Shown: one piece after another, positions 5,510 to 50,100 of the stretch
Position numbering within the stretch: position 1 is the first letter of the stretch
Layout: the number at the start of each line of letters is the position of its first letter
From: Zygnema circumcarinatum SAG 698-1b
Lineage: Eukaryota; Plantae; Zygnematophyceae
DNA length: 64,000 nucleotides
Direction of reading: 5' to 3'
Assembly (NCBI GenBank): GCA_037447605.1
Contig: CM074808.1
Coordinates: 2,604,001-2,668,000 of the forward strand
The notes under the pieces: generated by a model
What the model was told of the DNA's origin: nothing
Seen by the model: the letters and a program-made list of their open reading frames with translations, nothing else
The model's database searches: none
Translations under genes and position numbers: made by a program

Positions 5510-6075
5510 TTTAGGTCCTTCTTGAGCGGTTGGTTCTTCGTGGTTCCCCATGGCGACTTTGTCCATGTACCTTTTATGGCATCGTTTTCGTGAGATCAAT
5601 GCCATTCACCTCTCTCTATATATATCGCCGACCTTCCTCTCGCGCTCTCCCTCGCGTCTGACAGAGAGATATTGCAGTGGCTGCTATATCACATCGCCAA
5701 GGATACTGCACCGATCAAAGTCATTCCAGCATACTTATGCTCTGTTATGTGATGCCTCCTTGGCAATGAGCAAACAGACAGCTATGGATTCTGGTTGAAA
5801 CCATCCAACGTGGTCATCGAATCTGAAAGGGAAAGCAAGATCAATGCAAGCCAAGTTGTTGAAATGTGTATCCCTAAACCAGTTATCCCGCGCGGTCTTT
5901 TGGAAGGCTTGGGAAAAATTCGTGTGCTAGATAAACAAACTTCATCGGGTTCATATTTCACAACCCCTTGCTTTTTTCTTTCGTCCTTAAGTCCGTTGCG
6001 ACCAATTCTTCGTGGTTCCCCACGATGATTTTGTCCATGTACATTTAATGGCATCGCCATCGTGAGATCAATGCC
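5510..6075. repeat. Two direct copies of a ~90-105 bp dispersed repeat (third copy inverted at 59715-59822)
   Basis: Shared core cttcgtggttcccca...tttgtccatgtac...atggcatcg...cgtgagatcaatgcca at ~5525-5605 and ~5995-6075. Confidence 0.85.
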
Positions 6076-6379
6076 ACATATTTTCCTTGAAATTGGAAAG
6101 CGCCACTTTTATTTGTTGGAGTCTGTCTCAAGGAAGTCCATGGGTTGACTAGCGAAAAACATATATACGTATATTATGGCGCAAAATATGATGTTAAGTC
6201 ATGGCCACGAACATCATAGAAGGATTTTCTCCAAGCAACAAAGGGGCACAACATATCACAAAGAGGCTGCTTCTTTATTTCTTATTTCATTGCTTTCTGC
6301 CCAAGCTCCTACTCCCATCCGCAGAATCTACAACTCAGAGAAAGGATTGTGTCGGGATTGGTTGAAGCCCATAGCCATC

Positions 6380-40638: not shown

Positions 40639-41716
40639 TGATCGCTCGCCTCATGTGTACATACGAAGGCCGAGATTTACAAGGGGGCCCTTTTTAAGGT
40701 GAGGCTGCCTCCTTGACGAGAGTGGTTGTGTGATAAGTAGAACAAAAAAGGGCTGGAAGTATTCTTCAGCCTCCTGGTGACGTAATTTGGGATTTTTTTT
40801 TTGGTTCAGGATCGAATTATAAGACTTGCCGCTTTTGTTGCCTATCACATGACAGGGAGAAGGCACTAAGTGCAGAATAATGCGCGCGGCCACATCTATA
40901 GGCTGATTTTAGAGTTTATGCAGGTACAGTAGCCCAATTTTTTTTTTTTTTTGTAGTTCTGTAGATGCCGGCAGCTTTGGGTAGGGCAGAGGGTTGTAGT
41001 GATAAGCTGTGAAAAAAGAAATTTCCAAAGCATCTTCATTTGCTGCTAGTTGTAGAGAACTTTGCGGCGTAAACTTGTCGTTAGATAACAAGGAGCAATC
41101 TTTAGAGATTTTTTTTTTAGCGTCACAGGTTGTATTCACAAGAAACTGGTCAACACGAAGCATATGCTTTGGGTCATGACATGTTCATATCCAATATCTA
41201 TTGCTGTTGTAACTTGTAAGGGGGGAATGTCACTCATTGTTTTGAAAGGTTCTTTCTATTTGTTTATGCTCAAACACCAGTTGTCGACCACTAGACCAGA
41301 ACGCACAAGTACTACAAAGGCAGCTCGAAAGGAAACGTGACATTGGTTCCTCTCCTGCACTCCTAGCAATTGCATTCACAGGGGAGCAGCAAGGACTTCG
41401 GAAGTTCTCAGGCGCAAGTAAAGATGAGACAACAATGTCGAACAAGGACAAGCAAAGCAAGTATCTCCGTGAATCTTTATGTCAACATGATTCCGAGTAT
41501 ATCGCCCCTCAGGCATTAACCGCCTTATGCCCCCCTAGTCCTGTCAGCTACCTGCTTCAGCACTTAGCCCCTGCGTGCGAATAGCACAGGCAGACCATCC
41601 ACGTGAGGAAAAAACCTACTCTTTCAAATACTGTGTATACATCTTCTTCAATGACAGTACTACCCCAACCATGTTCGACATATACTAGGCAACACCTTCT
41701 TCCCGCAAGGAATGCG

Positions 41717-44700
41717 CTACCTGTAGCTGCCAAACCCGGCTGACCCCTGTCCACCTCCTGGCCCACCCGGCCCACCCGGCCCACCCGGCCGCATGTTGGC
41801 AGGGCCAGGTCCAAATTGGCCATTTGGCGGTGGCGTTCCATGGTGGTGTGTTCCGGGGGGGGGTACTCCCGGTGGCCCAGAAGGTGGTCCTGACGGTCCG
41901 GAGGGACCCCCCCTCCCAGGTGAAGGCCCAGGAGCACCCCCTGGCCCTGGCCCTCCCGCACTCATATGCTGCCCCGATCCCATAGGAGGAGGTCCCCCAG
42001 GACCACCAGGAGGCCCAGAAGGACCCACATGACCCGGCCCCCTAGGACCCATGTGCATGTGATTCTGCTGCATTGGAACACCAGGGGGTCCCCCTAACGG
42101 CCCATGAGGACCCATCGGTCCCCGAGAATTGCTTGCATTCCCTGACCCAGATGAGCCCCCTTGCCCTCCAGGACTTATAGGAGGGCCTCCAGGAGGCCCC
42201 CCTTGCCCAGACCCCCCCCCTGCATTTGCCCCATGTGGGGGTCCGGATGGCATGCCATACCCACTTGGAGCAGCATTGTATGGTGCTCCCGGGGGTCCTG
42301 GCAGACCGGGTGGCATGCCGCCAGGTACACCCGGAGCCTTGGAAAGGTCGTAATCCCAAAGACCCATTTGGGCCTGTCCATCGGCAGGGGGAGGACCGGG
42401 TATGCCTCCAAACTGAGGGCCATAGCCCTGCTGGGGACGGCCCATGCCTGGTTGAGAGCCGGGGGTCCCTGGACTCGAAATTGCAGCCTGTGGGGGGAGC
42501 CCAGGGTTGGTGTAGTCTCTGCTGCGTTCGTTGTTTGCCTGCTAGACAACGGTCCAAACACTTTCAGTTGATGATGTTCAATGAGAGGCTTGGAAATTAC
42601 GCGAAGGCAGCAAGCTCAGCACTTGACAAGAGAGGAGAGAGAAGAGAGAAGAGAGAAGAGAGATGAGAGATGAGAGAAGGATGAAGAGAAGAGAGAGAAG
42701 AGAGAAGCGAGAAGAGAGAAGAGAGAAGAGAGAAGAGAGAAGAGAGAAGAGGGAAGAGAGAAGTGAGATGAGAGAGAGAACAGGACAAGAAGACAAACAA
42801 AACCAGAGAAAACATCGTGGACACCACTCGGAACTATGTGCTGGCAGGTGAACACCAAGAAATTCTGGCAAAACACGTCGATACTTTCCAGCGCGTGGAA
42901 ACGAACAGACAATTGAACAGAACAATTCAAACTATTCATTTCCAACCAATCCGTGGCAAAGATTGGTACCTTCACATTCAAATCGGTGTGTCGAGAATAA
43001 GAAAGCCGAAGTTTACAATAACCTCCATCATAAACACAATGACCTTCCAAAGCCTCCTTGGCTTGCACAGCAGTGGGAATGTCTGCATAGTCAATGCATG
43101 GGGAACTAGTGTCAGATGCCATTCAATTCTTTGAAATGGCACTTCAACATCATGCTTTAGTGCACAGCTTGCTTTACCCCCTGCAAGAAACTCGGCAACC
43201 AGGAATTCTTTCCGGTAGCTACAATGTACTAGTTTGAGACAGGTTGGAACCGAAAAAAATGCACGGTTACAACAAAAACACCTTGCCGAAGAAATCATTC
43301 TACTCCGTAAAGGTGGAGGTGTTGCAAAGTAACGAACCTGGGTATTGCACAAGCGCTTGAAAGCCCGCGGTTTTCTCAAATATAGCAATCTTTTGAACCG
43401 TTCCAAACGCAGAAAAGACCTGAAACATTAGCACACGAGGTCAGCCAAAACGTATCCAAGGACCTATGGAATCAGCTTCCCTGGATGGAAAATTGAAGAC
43501 GTTGCATTGAACTCGTGGCTCAGTAGAAATGAAGTCCGCTTAATAACCTTACGAAATGGGAAGAATGATGCAAGCATGTTCCAGAGGCGAAAAATGGCAG
43601 AACACAACATGATCAGAGTACACAATCAGTAGAGAAGGAAGATACCGTGTGAAGAACCTCAATGGTCACAGCATATTGCATATTCTCAATGGAGACCAAA
43701 AGCACATTGCTTTCCGGCTCCCGTTTCTTCCCGTCCGGACCGAGACCAAAAAGCTGAGGACGTTACCCACCCTTGCCCTTGCCCAGCCATCAGTGACGAA
43801 GCAAGGGAATCCAAATGCATAGAGGAAAATTGACTTTCTACAGGTCTAAACTTCATCACGCGCGTCAAAGAACAAAGTCTGTGACTAGATATTTCTTATT
43901 ACGAAAGCAATGTAGCTAACCAAAGTAGGGTACCTGGCCACTTGTGTCAGTTGCCGAAGGGGCGACAGGTAAATATGGATTCGTGTAATCTCTGCAAAGG
44001 CAGCAAATAAATTTTCATCTCAGAGGAAGTGACAGCATCCAAAATACAATGGCGAGTAGGCACTCCAGTTCTTTATGAAAGAGACAGAACAGAACAAAAA
44101 CAGCAAAAGACAGAGTTTCTGAAGTTCTTAAAAGACAGAGTCAACAATGGAGTAATGGATTTAGTCCAATCACTGAGGAACAGTATCTCGGCAATTGGAT
44201 TAACCTGCTCCGGTGACTTTGAAATTTCACATTGAGGTCATTGTGTGCTGAGAAAGAAATCCGCAGACTGCATGACGTCACATGCTCAGGTAGAAGATAT
44301 CTGGAAGAGGAAAGTGTCACAAGAAATAGCAACTTAGCAACCATCAAGCAGGATTGCCTTGGGTGAACAGACAAATGGGCCACAAAACCCTTTGCCATTA
44401 GGCAAGGTCAACTGGGAAATGAGAAGGCCAAATAGTTGGTTCAACCAAAATAAAATCAAGCCTCAGATCCCATACAAGGAATCGTAATAAAATAGTTACG
44501 AAAGCCAGCATATGGCTTCCAGGTGGGAATTTCGAGAGTTAAAATTTCACCTCGGAATGCTGCGACCTTCAAGTGCTGACTTGGCAGCAGAAGCTGTATT
44601 TGGATCACCAAATTGAACCAAGGCCTGCACATACATAAACTTGCGGCAGCTTAACACCACATCAAGCCGCCCTTAATATAATAACTGGAGACAAAGGACC

Positions 44701-46556
44701 CAATAAGAGTTCCACATGGCCGATGACTTGTCAAAAACAAGTACAAGAAACAGTTGGTAGATGATGGTAAATCCAGTTGGAACAAACCTGAAACCCTGCA
44801 CTCTTTTCAAACGTTGCTATCTTGTGAACGAACCCAAAAGCTGAGAATACCTGGAAATCAACAACCAATGAGAAGAAATTAGCTTTGATAAAGGTTGAGG
44901 CAACATTCCACCGAATGGTTCCACTGAAGAAACAACCATGGCGCGATGCACGTGGAAGTTGTCTCCAAGCTCAGAATAACAGCACACGTTGGGTGGCCGT
45001 CGAGTTACAACCACAATGGAGACGCAATATATACCATCGTACTTATAGGCGAACCATCACACAGCAATTCGTTCAACCTGACAATAAGTTTCACCATCTG
45101 GAGGAAAGGAGAAAGGCCACCAAAACATACATTGCATTCAACAGGCAAATAGATAAGTGAAAACTCATGGAACTTAGAAAAATCACGATATTTAGATGGT
45201 CCTCGAAAAACAGCGATAGAAAAATTATTAAAACATAGGACCCGATGGCTCGTATAGCTCAGTGGTGAGCAATATTATACGCCACAAAACGACGAGTCAA
45301 CTTATACAACAAACACGTATACACATATACCTATAAACTTATATACTCGTACACTTTCCTCGAACAGGAGCCAAACAATGACAGAGCCAAGCCCTCAAGC
45401 CATTTTCCTGAAAGGCTGCCTTGCTAGATACTCATTACAAATAGAGATTCAGCACTATTTAAGCCTTCAAAAAACGTTAAGTTGAAGGGGCTCGACGATT
45501 GTTAGCAAATATTGGGAAACCCAATCCGCATGTTACTATCCTGAAAGGTGGGGAGAGCGGGAGGAGGGAATGGGCTGGTTGAGGTGAGGAGTGCAAAAAA
45601 AATGGGGGGGGCAGAGCGAAAGGTGGGAAGAAGGTGAGTAAAAGGTGAGTTTTGAATTAGGCTAGGGGTAGATGAACACACACAAATCGCTCTCCCCAGG
45701 AAAATGCAGAAGTCTGCCATCATGAAGCCGGCAGGACCTGCTCATCGGAGCAACTTCGGTCACGCACAAAAAAGAAACGCATCACAGCTGGACCAGTGAG
45801 TACAAATTGCAAAACAACAGGTCGCGTTCAAAAACTACTGAGGGAAGCGCATCATAGACTTTGACCTTCGTCCTAACATGCCCCGAACTAAACTACTGCC
45901 CTGTGATTTTTCATCAAGACTGACCAGCTAATCCTACGGTGAAAGCCGCCAGCGAGACAGTGGTCAGTAATAATTCAAGCTTACCAAATGCAGGACATCA
46001 ATGCTGACATCCCCAGCTTCCACCCCCTCAATGGTGACCAGCAAAACGTTACTTGCGACATCCCCTGATTGCTTGGTCGTAACTATCTCCTGCCTGGTAG
46101 AGTACTGCAGGTATACAGCTTTTCCTCGAACTTGAGCAGGTTCAGAAGAGGATGCATAGTACGAAACCATGGAAATAGCTTGGTTTAGGTCTGCCTGTGA
46201 CCCAAGGAGCACAGAACAAAATAAGTTCTATATGAAGTGTCTTGAGTGTGCAATCAACCTTAGAACCTTCGGGACGAGCGTCAAGGATGCATCCACTTTA
46301 TTCACAAGAAAACAGCAGGCTCTGCATGAGAGTCGAAAAGGTTTTGAAGAATATGAGACAGCGCACTTACAAATTCGACAAATGCTTGATTGTGATTCGC
46401 CCCTACGTTAAGCTTCGTATTAACGACCTTCCCGAACGGCTTGCAGAGCTCAATGAGCTCTTCCTCTGTACATTCCCATGGCAGATTTCTGACATGCAAC
46501 ACCTTGGACGGAGGCTGGGTGTACCGAAACTGTGGCTGCCCTCCGGACCCGCTCAT
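41717..46556 (-). CDS. PTB: Polypyrimidine tract-binding protein homolog 1/2 (3 RRMs plus G/P-rich tail), ~603 aa
   Basis: Exons 46556-46371, 46194-45985, 44850-44788, 44624-44551, 44300-44205, 43991-43934, 43753-43646, 43419-43338, 43082-42970 and 42538-41717 total 1812 nt. Motifs: QPQFRYTQPPSKVLHVRNLPWEC, VFSAFGFVHKIATFEKSAGFQ, SYSRHTDLNVK. Confidence 0.95.
42625..42780. repeat. (AGAGA/GAGAA)n microsatellite in the last PTB intron
   Basis: Direct reading of the sequence. Confidence 0.9.
45545..45737 (-). promoter_or_regulatory. Candidate PTB poison cassette exon (45737-45684) with downstream CU-rich tract
   Basis: gagcag|GTCCTGCCGGCTTCATGA...GCGATTT|gtgtgt. In-frame TGA at 45722-45720, followed by a ~110-nt pyrimidine-rich stretch on the sense strand. 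Confidence 0.6.
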
Positions 46557-46643
46557 GATTGCTCGAAGGCAGGCAGTAGCAGCAGAGCGAGGAGGACGTC
46601 AAAGCAGAATGGCGCAGCACTCCACGCGAGCAGCAGCTGCAGA

Positions 46644-46652
46644 TTAGGGTTT
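46644..46652 (-). promoter_or_regulatory. Telo-box (AAACCCTAA) in the PTB 5' leader
   Basis: TTAGGGTTT on the plus strand, ~90 nt upstream of the ATG. Near-matches (AACCCTAA) occur upstream of RPN12 at ~17789 and ~17872. Confidence 0.5.
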
Positions 46653-47105
46653 CTGCGCTTCACTCCTCTGGTGCAGTGCAGGGCTGATCGACGGCTGGGA
46701 GCAGCCCAAATCAAATTTTTACACGTGCAAAATTGATCGGACGGTTGGAAATGAGCAAGTCTTGTGGCACTGCGAGACGTTGGGGAGGGCACTTCAGTCT
46801 CTCTCCTTCTGGACAGTGCCATGAGCCTGCCCTGCCTGCCTTCAGCGCTTGTAGGGGGAAATTGAAGGGGAAATGTATCCCTCTCCTGCGGGTGGTGCTG
46901 CTGGTGCCTCCTTTTCTCCCTGCTTTTATTCAGTGAGGACCGGGTTCGGGATGCGGTTATGCAGAGGCAGCCATGCGAGGTGGAGGAGCTGAGGAAAGAC
47001 GCGGCGGAGAAGGAGAGTTAGGAAGGTTCTGAATTTTGGGAAAGGGCGGAATTTTGAAACAATTGGAAGTGCGTTCGAGAGGCAGCAGCTGCAGGGGTGT
47101 CGGCG

Positions 47106-50100
47106 ATGATGGCTCCCTCAAAGGAGCAAGGGGAGGGGAAGACAGCTGCCCATGACAGTGGGAAAGAGGGCACCAAAGATAGCCACCATGTAAAGGGGGA
47201 AAAAGGGAAGAATAGCAATGGAGCCTCTGTGCATAGTGCAAGCAGCTCGACCGCCTTATCTCGCAGCGGAAGTTCAAAGACTAGCGCAGCTCCGAAAGGG
47301 GATGCCAGTCCCGGCATGGCCTTGACACGTCCTGAGGTTAGCCAAGAGCTCCCCCTGCCCCCCCTCCTCCCCTTTTTTTTTTTTTTTAAAGGAAGAGAGG
47401 GGAAAGCTTCCTTGCACGGATGATAGCTATTCACAACTAGCCTAGGATCAAACCAGTTTTTGCTGTCTCGGCTTACTTAATGGTTTTCTCATAGCTCCTT
47501 GCTGCATCTGCAACCAGACACTTTAGACATCCTTAAAGGTGACAAGGGTGCGAAATTCGAAATGTAAGGGCATGACATTCGGTCAATTTGAGTCAGGGCA
47601 AGCTGGCTGGGTGGCAACTGATGTCCAGCAACTACGTACACTACAAGTGTATTTTTTTTCCGTCCTCATCTCTTATGGCATTCTGTTTGGATATCGATGG
47701 CGCTAGGCTGTTGTTCCATAGACGTGGTACAGTACGTTATAATTTAGACTTGCCTTAGCTCGGAAAAACTATGAGTTCTTTTCCCATAGCTGAATTTTCC
47801 TGGTTTTGACCCAACAAGAAATTGCTAAAGTAGTCAATTGTGTTGCAGATTTCACGAGGGCCTGTGTGGTTAGAGACACTTGATGGGGACATTGAGGAAG
47901 TCGAGCGTGAAGTAGCACTCTTGTCTCCCTTGGTGCAACGTGAAGTGCTGCGGTTTGGGCATGGCGCCTCCCGGGAATCTCCTGTGGTGCTGCCGAAGCA
48001 AGTTAGCCCTGGAGTTTTGAAGCTCATTCTCGAGTATTGCCGTTTTCATCGAGTTCCGGGCCGTTCAGACAAGGTTTGGTTGAACCCTTGTCCGAGACAA
48101 ATGGTGCTATATTCAGGGAAACCGTCAGCATTCACCATGTAGTTTTGCTCGATGATTGTAGTCATGACAGGATGCTAATTCCCTTACTTGTCAAAGTGCG
48201 CATAAAGTCAAGATACTGATCGTTTATAAACACATAATGTGCAAGCTTCGTCAAAATTTCAAGTCTTCCTGCACTGTTCTTGAAGACCTTTAGAAGGATG
48301 GAGTTAAAGTAGGAGCAAAGCTGGCAAATCTTGCAAAGAGGCTGCTGTGAGAGAGCAACTCATAATTTCCAAAGCACGTTTTGTAAGTAGAGGAATAGGT
48401 TTTCTAGGGATCCTCTTAGAGCGCATCAGCTCTTTGTGTGGAAATTCCGGAGAACTGTCGTTTGCAGAATTTAGGGCTTACTTTGCAGAAGGGAAATCTG
48501 TGGTCGTATCAGGAACGAAAGCTATTTGATGAAAAATTTATACGACTTGATACCCGAAGGCTATGCGAGCTAACGTCTGCGGCAGACAGTTTAGATATGA
48601 AACCGTTGGTGGATTTGACAAGCAGAGCTCTTGCACGAATGATCGAGGGTAAAACACCTGAGGAGATTCGGGAAACATTTCACTTGCCAGACGACCTGAC
48701 GGAAGTACACACGGAAGGCTTGTGCCCCAGAAAAAGGCTTAACCATTTCATTTTGAGTTTGCTTGTTGTGGTCGGAAATTGGTGTGAAATAGCACATCCG
48801 AAATATTCTGTGGCTTTCAGTAAATGCGTTGATGGAAGCTTGATGTGTTTCTGTAGGGGGTATATGGGATCGAGGTTACTCGGTTGAACAGTCCTGCTTC
48901 ATGGCAGGATGATAGGTGCGAGAGAGAGGGAAGTTCGAATCGAAAGTTATTGTTTGCCTTTAAATTCTGACAGTTGAGCTGTTGCCATGTTATGTGACAG
49001 GAAGAGAAGCTGGAGCCTGTAAAGAACGCCACTGATGATCCCCGAATCAGACTTTTGAACAGACTGTATGCACGCAAACGAAAAGAGCTACAAGAAAAAA
49101 AGTTGCTCAAGGTAAGGATTTTGGAGATTTTCCAGGCAGAATTGCGCTAGGAACAGCATCATCAGCTGATCACCCTTTAGTTATGCAAGGACTATTCGAT
49201 TAGGTTTTATCGCGTCTACTCAATTTGTGATTGGTTCGTTTGTTTTATGCTTGTAGTAACTAAGGCGCTGGCATTGCAAGTTGGGATGCTCATTGAACAT
49301 TGAGGTGAGTTTTGCCACTGGATGATAAGTTGAATCATTTCTGAATATGGAGGGTCCAGAGCGTGTCGACTGAATCTGATGATAAACCTCGGGACGAACG
49401 ATCGGTGGATGACCTGCTTTCATTTATTGATGGCAACAATCATGGTGAGTTTGTTAATTTTTTTTGCAATGGTGATCAGGGGAATCACTTAGTGCCAGAT
49501 AGGTACTTGACAATGAACCAGTATAAGTTTTTAAGCTTTCTGATAGACATTAGTGGCTTTTTGAATGGAAGTTGCCGTCAATAGACTGACAGCATAGCAT
49601 CAGAAATCTCTATCATCAACCTCATAAAATAAAATTGGCGTTAATCTTCGGCACCCTTGAGAGACACCTGGGTTTGGATAAATGGTGTGTTCAGTATATT
49701 GGGGATGTTTGTGGTGAAGCTTCCTGAGAAGGGTGTTGAATTGTGCAGATTTACAATTCTAGTGTAAAGCAGTGAAGGAAGCAATGTGCAATGGCATCAA
49801 ACAGGTCATTTCATTTTTTTTTTAGTCGGGGATGCCTTTTGTTTGCGGCTATTTTGTTGAGCAGCTTTATTTTTTGAGCTAGCGATTTTGCAGTATAAGA
49901 GTAGCTTATGCATTAAAGGTATACGTTTGAATCCAGATAGTGATGACGACACAATTTCAGGTGATGGATTCCTGATGACTTCCGTACGGGTTTAGTGTCT
50001 TTCCACAGTCCATTCAAAAGAGAGAATGAGGAGGATTGCAAGTTCAATGAAGGCCAATAGATTTGATCTGCTCATGCAGTTTTTGTAAGCTCCTTCTGTT

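What the first reader, a model, noticed from the sequence alone, without database searches (positions are those of the whole stretch)
45545..45737. Candidate autoregulatory poison exon in PTB intron 2
Seen: a 54-nt AG/GT-bounded segment (45737-45684) in the longest PTB intron. Because exon 2 ends in phase 0, inclusion reads VLPAS-stop, far upstream of many later junctions. The donor is weak (TTT|GTGTGT) and is followed by ~110 nt of CU-rich sequence, and a second acceptor-like ctttcag|GAT sits at ~45542. Established: Arabidopsis PTB1/PTB2 regulate themselves through PTC-introducing alternative splicing and NMD, including a cassette exon in PTB2. Inference: this circuit already exists in this alga-like lineage.
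Basis: partly seen in the sequence, partly recalled or inferred. Interest (0 to 1): 0.75.

Follow-up and report, generated by a model that had tools for sequence, protein, structure and literature searches.

The report
Conserved PTB poison exon in alga
A 54-base stretch inside an intron of this alga's PTB splicing-regulator gene matches, in sequence and position, the stop-codon-carrying "poison" exon that flowering plants use to limit their own PTB2 level, so the feedback element probably predates land plants, although its use in the alga's RNA has not yet been seen.

Summary
On the minus strand, intron 2 (45984-44851) of a PTB1/2-type gene holds an AG/GT-bounded 54-nt segment (45737-45684). 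It reads VLPAS-stop, has a GUGUGU donor, and is followed by about 140 nt of CU-rich sequence. On its own this is not above chance: the intron has 859 AG/GT segments of 20-250 nt, and 94% would be "poison".

Conservation decides it. Against relatives whose introns are otherwise unalignable, the only collinear non-exon match in the whole gene is 45772-45657. A profile built without the window hits the 64-kb window only there (E 2e-5). A profile from angiosperm PTB2 introns, including Actinidia rufa PTB2, hits those same relatives at E 1e-17 to 1e-20.

All homologues keep four features:
- the AGCAG|G acceptor;
- the GUGUGU donor published for the Arabidopsis PTB2 cassette motif;
- a pyrimidine tract downstream;
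- a premature stop, made either by an in-frame stop or by a frameshift.

RNA contigs from four studies confirm introns 1-4. They show intron 2 alone retained and no cassette junction, but contigs drop rare forms.

Verdict: this is an orthologue of the known plant PTB2 poison exon in a zygnematophyte-like alga. Its use, NMD coupling and PTB dependence here are inferred. I found no prior report outside Pentapetalae.

The parts
46371..46556 (-). PTB gene exon 1 (ATG at 46556-46554; 62 codons, start of RRM1)
   Evidence: Read. Pfam RRM_1 E 1.5e-9. Junction 46371>46194 is present in contigs of 4 runs.
45985..46194 (-). Exon 2 (70 codons, ends in phase 0 with ...SIDVLHL)
   Evidence: 97% identical to Spirogloea muscicola, 77-81% to angiosperm PTB1/2. 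The intron position after ...IDV(L/I)HL is conserved in all 40 genomic relatives.
44851..45984 (-). Intron 2 (1134 nt). Removed in the main mRNA, but also present unspliced as a contig joined to both flanking exons.
   Evidence: joint 45985>44850 in 4 runs. A contig spans 44822-46011 in X1, X3 and X7 (two pieces in X2). Introns 1 and 3 have no contig cover. Intron 2 is 1.0-1.3 kb in the alga-like and group-B relatives.
45657..45772 (-). Conserved block: the only collinear non-exon similarity to relatives in the whole gene
   Evidence: blastn (E 1e-6 to 3e-2 in 7 loci). Alignments A1 and A2 (25 invariant columns in 14 sequences). The group-B-only profile hits the window only here, E 1.9e-5.
45759..45763 (-). 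Putative branch point GUGAC (A at 45760, 22 nt upstream of the acceptor AG's G at 45738)
   Evidence: It aligns with the near-invariant UUGAC of relatives (A2). The assignment as branch point is inference from the plant YURAY consensus (own knowledge).
45738..45739 (-). Cassette acceptor AG (context AGCAG|G, invariant in all homologues)
45684..45737 (-). 54-nt cassette (poison) exon. It reads VLPAS then TGA (45722-45720), so the ORF would stop after 137 codons.
   Evidence: Sequence. Homologous cassettes are 54-62 nt and all generate a premature stop. Not seen spliced in the RNA contigs.
45676..45683 (-). Weak cassette donor GUGUGUGU
   Evidence: G/U positions are invariant in A2. It matches the 'GUGUGU' consensus of the published PTB2 motif (PMC12218528 section 16). 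A Gossypium hirsutum model uses the first GU (P0105).
45665..45697 (-). Possible hairpin: purine arm GGGGAGA (45697-45691) pairs with UCUACCCC (45672-45665), with the donor in the loop
   Evidence: MFE structures place the donor in or beside the loop in the 13 homologues with enough sequence; L002 is cut off 15 nt after its donor. alifold gives -4.3 kcal/mol. Cells paired 94% against 45-78% for slid controls. The window alone gives z 0.44. Suggestive only.
45541..45675 (-). CU-rich tract downstream of the cassette donor, ending in an acceptor-like cag (AG 45542-45541). Presumed PTB binding platform.
   Evidence: Pyrimidine fraction is 0.76 in the 120 nt after the donor against 0.59 upstream. 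The same asymmetry (0.68-0.79 against 0.48-0.53) holds in the 12 homologues with enough downstream sequence. PTB binding is inferred from Arabidopsis work cited in PMC12218528 and PMC13485355.
44788..44850 (-). Exon 3 (21 codons, VFSAFGFVHKIATFEKSAGFQ)
44551..44624 (-). Exon 4
   Evidence: Joint 44788>44624. The loose end at 44551 continues into exon 5, which starts at 44300.

Best explanation
The 54-nt segment 45737-45684 is this streptophyte alga's orthologue of the poison cassette exon of plant PTB2-type genes.

Proposed working:
- The gene's own product, a PTB1/2-type polypyrimidine tract-binding protein, binds the roughly 135-nt CU-rich tract that starts right after the weak GUGUGU donor.
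- The start of that tract can pair with the purine-rich end of the cassette and hide the donor. Protein binding would free or activate the donor, and the cassette would be spliced in between exons 2 and 3.
- The reading frame then stops at a TGA six codons into the cassette, after 137 codons. The stop lies 36 nt before the next junction and upstream of about eight junctions in all, so the mRNA is unproductive and expected to be removed by NMD. This closes a negative feedback loop.

Shown here: the gene is PTB1/2-type; the flanking splice junctions are real; the segment is the only conserved intronic block; it is homologous, through intermediate plants, to the angiosperm PTB2 cassette; the acceptor, the GUGUGU donor, the downstream pyrimidine tract and the stop-generating property are all conserved; intron 2 alone is found unspliced in RNA.

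Inferred: inclusion in this alga, NMD of the included form, binding and dependence on PTB, and the hairpin switch.
For: 1. Gene identity. Exon 1 hits RRM_1. The exon-2 peptide finds plant PTB1/PTB2 proteins, 97% identical to Spirogloea muscicola and 77% to Closterium. A tree puts the window next to Spirogloea.

2. Position. Angiosperm ORFs P0047 (Actinidia PTB2), P0105 (Gossypium) and P0098 carry this cassette directly after ...IDVLH(L/Q); P0049 and P0129 carry a cassette of a different sequence at the same junction. In P0105, P0049 and P0129 the cassette is followed by frame-shifted exon 3. So the angiosperm cassette lies in the same intron.

3. Conservation. blastn of intron 2 against the same intron of relatives gives one significant block, 45772-45657. 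With the whole 5.5-kb gene as query it is the only collinear non-exon hit in 7 loci.

4. Independent profiles. A group-B-only HMM hits the 128 kb searched (both strands of the window) only at 45761-45667, E 1.9e-5. An angiosperm-only HMM hits group B at E 1e-17 to 1e-20.

5. Exon-like conservation pattern. AGCAG|G and GUGUGU are invariant. Cassettes are 54-62 nt and all create a premature stop, by different means: an in-frame TGA here, an in-frame TAG in most angiosperm copies, a frameshift in group B. This is what selection on 'poison' rather than on a peptide predicts.

6. Pyrimidine content is 0.68-0.79 downstream against 0.48-0.59 upstream in all.

7. Literature. AtPTB1 and AtPTB2 keep a PTC-carrying cassette as an NMD target under auto- and cross-regulation (PMC3355609). 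The PTB2 motif is a hairpin with GUGUGU in the loop and a pyrimidine 3' arm, overlapping the cassette end (PMC12218528; PMC13485355).

8. No Rfam family matches in the intron.
Against: No cassette junction (45985>45737 or 45684>44850) appears in Logan contigs of four RNA runs from four studies. The intron contig is unbranched at the cassette in three of them.

No ORF with an algal or group-B cassette junction was found among 270 PTB fragments from public assemblies.

The angiosperm-only profile does not reach the window directly, so homology to the experimentally studied cassette is transitive.

The window copy is the most diverged, about 66% identical to group B. Closterium, another zygnematophyte, gives no significant match, so the element is not universal in the group.

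Hairpin support is weak.
Confidence: 0.7

Rival explanations
1. Decoy exon or detained intron. The conserved block assembles splicing factors (and PTB) but is rarely or never ligated into mRNA. Instead it stalls removal of intron 2, so that unspliced, stop-containing transcripts are held back or degraded. Feedback would then work through intron retention rather than cassette inclusion, at least in this alga.
For: In all four RNA runs a contig runs from exon 3 through the whole intron into exon 2 (44822-46011). Introns 1 and 3 have no contig at all, and intron 4 has almost none. That rules out DNA carry-over and shows retention specific to intron 2. By the tool's rough contig depths the unspliced form is about a fifth to two fifths of the spliced one plus itself. 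No cassette junction contig was seen. Reading into the intron stops after 6 codons (VSLNYY-stop).
Against: The homologous angiosperm element is spliced in as a cassette (P0105, which uses the first GU; PMC3355609; PMC12218528). Conservation of a stop-generating reading across copies is expected only if the segment is translated after inclusion. Intron 2 is also the longest intron, so slower removal is unsurprising. Contig depth is one figure per contig and is a poor measure.
Confidence: 0.2
2. A conserved intronic element with another role, such as a small RNA, a transcriptional enhancer or a binding site for a different factor, whose AG and GU edges are incidental.
For: Conservation alone does not name a function. 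The block extends about 35 nt upstream of the acceptor and about 25 nt past the donor.
Against: No Rfam match. The fold is not better than shuffles. The conserved upstream part fits a branch point plus acceptor and the downstream part a donor. The same element is a documented cassette exon in angiosperm PTB2.
Confidence: 0.07
3. Chance: an ordinary piece of intron that happens to be bounded by AG and GT and to contain a stop.
For: There are 859 such segments in this intron, and 94% would be 'poison'. CU-rich tracts are common in the window.
Against: Independent profile hit E 1.9e-5, unique in the window. The block is the only collinear non-exon similarity in 7 relatives. There are 25 invariant columns across 14 sequences.
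Confidence: 0.03

Closest known systems
Arabidopsis PTB2 (AT5G53180) poison cassette exon and the 'PTB2 motif' (Stauffer et al. 2010, as reviewed in PMC3355609; Sack et al. 2025, PMC12218528)
   Same: Same gene clade and same intron (after ...IDVLHL, phase 0). Alignable sequence through intermediates. AGCAG|G acceptor, GUGUGU donor, purine-rich exon end, long pyrimidine stretch just after the donor. Inclusion gives a premature stop.
   Different: The window copy is 54 nt with an in-frame TGA, whereas the angiosperm copies seen here are 56-58 nt with an in-frame TAG and/or a frameshift. It is much diverged in the exon body. The published motif was reported only in 93 Pentapetalae species. Inclusion, NMD and PTB dependence are shown in Arabidopsis and not here.
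Arabidopsis PTB1 (AT3G01150) NMD isoform
   Same: Paralogue with auto- and cross-regulated, stop-introducing alternative splicing (PMC3355609; PMC12652563).
   Different: PTB1-type introns sampled here (L013-L017, L020, L023/24, L026, L029, L030, L038) give no match to the cassette profile. The tree puts the PTB1/PTB2 split inside the sampled flowering-plant clade, so the alga's element resembles the PTB2 copy, which seems to keep the older form.
Mammalian PTBP1 exon 11 / PTBP2 exon 10 skipping coupled to NMD (PMC1940037)
   Same: A PTB protein limits its own level through unproductive splicing.
   Different: The polarity is opposite (repression and skipping of a coding exon, as in plant PTB3), the position in the gene differs, and there is no sequence homology of the element.
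Conserved poison exons of SR and other splicing-factor genes (Lareau and Brenner 2015, PMC4379411)
   Same: A non-coding, stop-carrying alternative region kept for hundreds of millions of years in a splicing regulator's own gene.
   Different: A different protein family. There, unproductive splicing is ancient but the elements themselves are often not homologous between kingdoms. Here the element itself is alignable from an alga to angiosperms.
Decoy exons in detained introns of animals (own knowledge, not checked here)
   Same: An exon-like intronic element associated with retention of its host intron.
   Different: Described in animals. Here it is only a rival reading suggested by the contig picture.

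Membership tests
Plant PTB1/2-clade protein gene | RRM-containing protein alignable to plant PTB1/PTB2 over the N-terminal exons | tested here: met
   RRM_1 E 1.5e-9. Exon 2 is 77-97% identical to plant and zygnematophyte PTBs. Tree.
PTB2-type poison cassette exon (AS-NMD autoregulatory module) | Lies in the intron that follows the exon ending ...IDV(L/I)HL, phase 0 | tested here: met
   Angiosperm cassette-bearing ORFs P0047, P0105, P0098, P0049 and P0129 show the same junction.
PTB2-type poison cassette exon (AS-NMD autoregulatory module) | Sequence homology to the angiosperm PTB2 cassette | tested here: met
   Met transitively. The angiosperm-only HMM hits group B at E 1e-17 to 1e-20. The group-B-only HMM hits the window at E 1.9e-5, a unique hit. 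The direct angiosperm-to-window search was not significant.
PTB2-type poison cassette exon (AS-NMD autoregulatory module) | Conserved AG acceptor and GUGUGU donor | tested here: met
   Invariant columns in A2. Boundaries. Published consensus in PMC12218528 section 16.
PTB2-type poison cassette exon (AS-NMD autoregulatory module) | Inclusion creates a premature stop upstream of later exon junctions | tested here: met
   TGA at 45722-45720, 36 nt before the next junction and about eight junctions upstream of the end. All homologues generate a premature stop.
PTB2-type poison cassette exon (AS-NMD autoregulatory module) | Long pyrimidine stretch immediately downstream of the cassette donor | tested here: met
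   0.76 pyrimidine over 120 nt, against 0.59 upstream. The same asymmetry holds in all homologues.
PTB2-type poison cassette exon (AS-NMD autoregulatory module) | Hairpin with the donor in the terminal loop (PTB2 motif) | tested here: inconclusive
   A hairpin is predicted in each copy with enough sequence. Consensus is weak at -4.3 kcal/mol. 94% of cells are paired against 45-78% when slid, and 3-5 of 500 shuffles reach the observed values. The window alone gives z 0.44. Purine and pyrimidine runs pair trivially, and the alignment shifts rows.
PTB2-type poison cassette exon (AS-NMD autoregulatory module) | Cassette-included mRNA exists in this organism | tested here: inconclusive
   No cassette joint in contigs of 4 RNA runs. 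Contigs drop rare variants.
PTB2-type poison cassette exon (AS-NMD autoregulatory module) | The included form is an NMD target, and inclusion rises with PTB level | not testable with these tools
   Needs NMD inhibition and PTB perturbation in the alga or a reporter.
Detained intron with decoy exon | Retention specific to the host intron in polyadenylated RNA | tested here: inconclusive
   The whole-intron-2 contig is joined to both exons in 4 runs, while introns 1 and 3 have none. Library type, polyadenylation and nuclear detention are unknown.

The most novel reading that the evidence does not exclude
The PTB feedback element (acceptor, roughly 55-nt stop-generating exon, GUGUGU donor, pyrimidine platform) arose before land plants and has stayed alignable for more than half a billion years. 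In the alga it may act mainly by holding intron 2 unspliced (a decoy-exon mode), with cassette inclusion plus NMD as a later or parallel output. That would make it one of the oldest sequence-conserved poison exons known in the plant lineage and a case where the mode of action shifted while the element stayed.
Probability: 0.2. Interest if true: 0.75.

Novelty: new member of a known kind. Interest (0 to 1): 0.6.

Why it matters
Self-limiting splicing of PTB genes is established in Arabidopsis and mammals. In the papers I could search, the plant cis-element has been traced only within core eudicots (Pentapetalae).

An alignable copy in a zygnematophyte-like alga, linked through a series of intermediate plants, would date the module to before the origin of land plants. 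It also shows which nucleotides have been held fixed: the AGCAG|G acceptor, GAUGGCAG, GGGAGA, the GUGUGU donor and the pyrimidine platform. That gives a compact, testable map of what PTB and the spliceosome read.

It further suggests that PTB2, not PTB1, keeps the ancestral arrangement. Finally, it offers an algal system in which to ask whether feedback runs through exon inclusion or intron detention.

Tried and rejected
1. Raw AG/GT-plus-stop statistics: not informative, because 94% of the 859 segments are 'poison'.

2. CU tract as evidence by itself: rejected, because there are 15 comparable tracts in the 64-kb window.

3. Rfam scan of 41500-47500: nothing in the intron, only sub-threshold hits upstream of the gene.

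4. Single-sequence folding: not better than shuffles.

5. RNA contigs: no cassette joint. The run search and read-laying caps (one each) are spent, so raw reads could not be examined.

6. Word search with exon 2 and tail analysis of 270 PTB fragments: no algal or group-B ORF crossing a cassette junction. The window's own fragments are not in the collection within the length limits.

7. Angiosperm-only profile against the window: no hit.

8. Closterium intron 2. The best profile hit is E 15, collinear but not significant. By eye there is an AG...TGA...GT segment followed by a (CCT)n tract. Left as a lead.

9. P0001 (Spirogloea): no DNA on record.

10. Papers not held: Stauffer 2010, Ruhl 2012, Burgardt 2024, and Burgess and Freeling 2014. 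Their content is cited only through papers that summarise them.

11. blastn at a strict E threshold missed the block because the gapped extension was not triggered. It was re-run at a loose threshold and filtered afterwards.

12. For the tree, per-exon tblastn pieces were set side by side in a local script only; nothing joined was sent to a search tool.

Full report
**What is in the sequence**

On the minus strand the window holds a gene whose first exons read as a plant PTB1/PTB2-type protein.
- Exon 1 (46556-46371) gives RRM_1 at E 1.5e-9.
- Exon 2 (46194-45985) ends in phase 0 with ...SIDVLHL.
- Intron 2 (45984-44851, 1134 nt) is the longest intron.
- Exon 3 starts at 44850.

It is cag|GTC CTG CCG GCT TCA TGA ... 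GCGATTT|gtgtgtgt, 45737-45684, 54 nt. It is followed to 45541 by sequence that is 76-80% pyrimidine and ends in ctttcag|GAT. Only that last coordinate is off, by one or two bases.

**Is the bare pattern more than chance? No**

The intron has 859 AG/GT-bounded segments of 20-250 nt, and 809 of them would introduce a stop or a frameshift. Pyrimidine tracts of this strength occur in 15 blocks of the 64-kb window. The local fold is no better than shuffles, z 0.44. Rfam finds nothing in the intron.

**RNA evidence**

Four of them, one per study, were laid on 44400-46650. All four are RNA in practice.
- Contigs join 46371>46194, 45985>44850 and 44788>44624.
- A loose end at 44551 continues into exon 5 at 44300.
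- Introns 1 and 3 have no contig at all.

No contig shows 45985>45737 or 45684>44850. Instead, every run has a contig that runs from exon 3 through the whole of intron 2 into exon 2: 44822-46011 in one piece in three runs and in two pieces in one.

So intron 2 alone is present unspliced, and this is not DNA carry-over. By the tool's rough per-contig depths it is about a fifth to two fifths of spliced plus unspliced. The tool warns that such depths are poor measures and that contigs drop rare variants. A low-abundance NMD substrate would therefore not be expected to survive assembly.

**Relatives**

A full-library search with the exon-2 peptide found plant PTB1/2 proteins.
- The best named hit is Spirogloea muscicola (97%). 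Closterium sp. is 77% in that search, and its genomic exon 2 (L003) is 86% identical by tblastn.
- Most short hits are ORFs that run from exon 2 into the following intron.
- Five angiosperm ORFs insert other residues directly after ...IDVLH(L/Q). P0047 (Actinidia rufa PTB2), P0105 (Gossypium hirsutum) and P0098 carry the cassette studied here; P0049 and P0129 carry a cassette of a different sequence. P0105, P0049 and P0129 then read exon 3 in a shifted frame.

The angiosperm cassette therefore sits in the same intron. Genomic DNA was fetched for Closterium (L003), Actinidia PTB2 (L039), 31 metagenome loci and several others. The intron after ...IDV(L/I)HL is in the same place and phase in all of them. 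It is 1.0-1.3 kb in the alga-like and 'group B' loci.

**Conservation**

blastn of the window's intron 2 against that intron in relatives gave one significant block, 45772-45657, in five loci. With the whole 5.5-kb gene as query, this block is the only collinear non-exon similarity in seven loci. Everything else that matches is exon or CT-repeat.

The alignment shows several shared features (25 invariant columns among 14 sequences):
- an invariant AGCAG|G acceptor;
- a near-invariant UGAC about 22 nt upstream, a likely branch point;
- shared body words (GAUGGCAG, GGGAGA..GCG);
- an invariant G/U pattern at the donor, followed by a pyrimidine run.

Profiles built without the sequence under test give the chain of homology.
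- An angiosperm-PTB2-only profile hits 'group B' loci (L004, L006, L007, L009-L012, L040-L042) at E 1e-17 to 1e-21.
- A group-B-only profile hits the 64-kb window on both strands only at 45761-45667, E 1.9e-5.
- The angiosperm profile alone does not reach the window.

A tree of the first three exons puts the window beside Spirogloea and L001. It puts group B with the flowering-plant sequences (SH-aLRT 81), so group B is probably non-seed land plants. Its exact identity is unknown.

**Exon-like behaviour of the conserved block**

Taking the first GU of the GUGUGU as donor, as the Gossypium model does, cassettes are 54-62 nt. Every copy yields a premature stop, but by different routes:
- an in-frame TGA in the window;
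- an in-frame TAG in most angiosperm copies;
- a frameshift that stops inside exon 3 in most of group B.

The peptide is not conserved but the 'poison' is, which fits a non-coding regulatory exon. In every copy with enough sequence the 120 nt after the donor are 68-79% pyrimidine, against 48-59% before the acceptor.

**Match to published knowledge**

AtPTB1 and AtPTB2 retain a stop-carrying cassette to give an NMD-targeted form under auto- and cross-regulation (PMC3355609). The 'PTB2 motif' is a hairpin overlapping the cassette end. It has a GUGUGU consensus in the loop and a long pyrimidine stretch in the 3' arm that can serve as a PTB1/2 site. It was reported in 93 Pentapetalae species and not in PTB1 or PTB3 homologues (PMC12218528 section 16; PMC13485355).

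The window has the same parts in the same order. My scans likewise find the block in PTB2-type but not PTB1-type angiosperm introns.

The hairpin is predicted in each copy with enough sequence. It has modest support: alifold -4.3 kcal/mol; 94% of cells paired against 45-78% when slid; 3-5 of 500 shuffles as good. However, purine and pyrimidine runs pair trivially and the alignment shifts rows, so I call it suggestive. The authors of the motif made the same reservation.

**Mechanism proposed**

PTB binds the CU platform after the weak donor, and possibly competes with the purine-pyrimidine stem that covers it. The cassette is then included, translation stops after 137 codons upstream of about eight junctions, and the mRNA is lost to NMD.

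The main rival is that, in this alga, the element works as a decoy exon that holds intron 2 unspliced. The contig picture fits that reading, but the conserved stop-generating property and the angiosperm usage fit it less well.

**Limits**
- Homology to the experimentally studied cassette is transitive.
- Closterium shows no significant match, although by eye it has an AG...TGA...GT segment followed by a long (CCT)n tract at the same place.
- Spirogloea DNA was not on record.
- Four key papers are not held and are cited only through others.

**Novelty**

In five full-text searches I found no report of this element outside angiosperms. Burgess and Freeling 2014, which might bear on this, could not be read.

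I class the finding as a new member of a known kind: the plant PTB2 poison exon, here in a streptophyte alga. Other agents' notes on this genome also call it a streptophyte or zygnematophyte-like alga, which agrees with my tree. The scan holds no earlier follow-up of this stretch.

Noticed in passing
window 42625-42810 (minus strand); L003 7765-7880: The last intron of the PTB gene holds a roughly 180-nt (CT)n-type microsatellite ending about 85 nt upstream of the last exon. Closterium has a CT-rich tract directly before its homologous last exon. This may be a second PTB-binding platform, or just a repeat.
   Followed up: no
L003 3650-3736 and 5834-5925 / 5994-6091: The Closterium PTB gene carries, inside intron 1, a partial copy of the first 29 codons of exon 2. 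It also carries two tandem copies of the exon-5-like segment. These may be duplicated or alternative exons.
   Followed up: no
L003 4060-4290: Closterium intron 2 has an AG|GAC ATG ... TGA ... cag|GT segment followed by about 180 nt of (CCT)n at the place where other species have the cassette. The profile match there is collinear but not significant, E 15.
   Followed up: partly
L013-L017, L020, L023, L024, L026, L029, L030, L038 (angiosperm PTB1-type loci): None of the PTB1-type introns matches the cassette profile, although AtPTB1 is reported to have its own stop-carrying alternative region. The tree places the PTB1/PTB2 split inside the sampled flowering-plant clade, so PTB2 seems to keep the ancestral element.
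   Followed up: partly
window 45540-45542; alignment A2 columns 220-235: The CU tract ends in an acceptor-like cag|GAT. Angiosperm copies have TTTAG|GAT-like sites about 125 nt after the cassette donor. This may be a second alternative acceptor. No RNA contig uses it.
   Followed up: partly
window 47350-47412: A run of about 15 A followed by a G-rich stretch lies about 800 nt upstream of the PTB start codon. There are only sub-threshold miRNA-family hits there.
   Followed up: no
proteins P0029, P0095: Annotated angiosperm PTB models show other events at the same junction. P0029 has exon 3 skipped, with exon 2 joined to exon 4. P0095 has an in-frame 28-residue insert between exons 2 and 3.
   Followed up: no
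window 41720-42542: The last exon encodes a Pro/Gly-rich tail of about 270 residues, absent from typical angiosperm PTB1/2 proteins (about 400-545 aa here). A long C-terminal extension is also present in the 682-aa Closterium protein.
   Followed up: no
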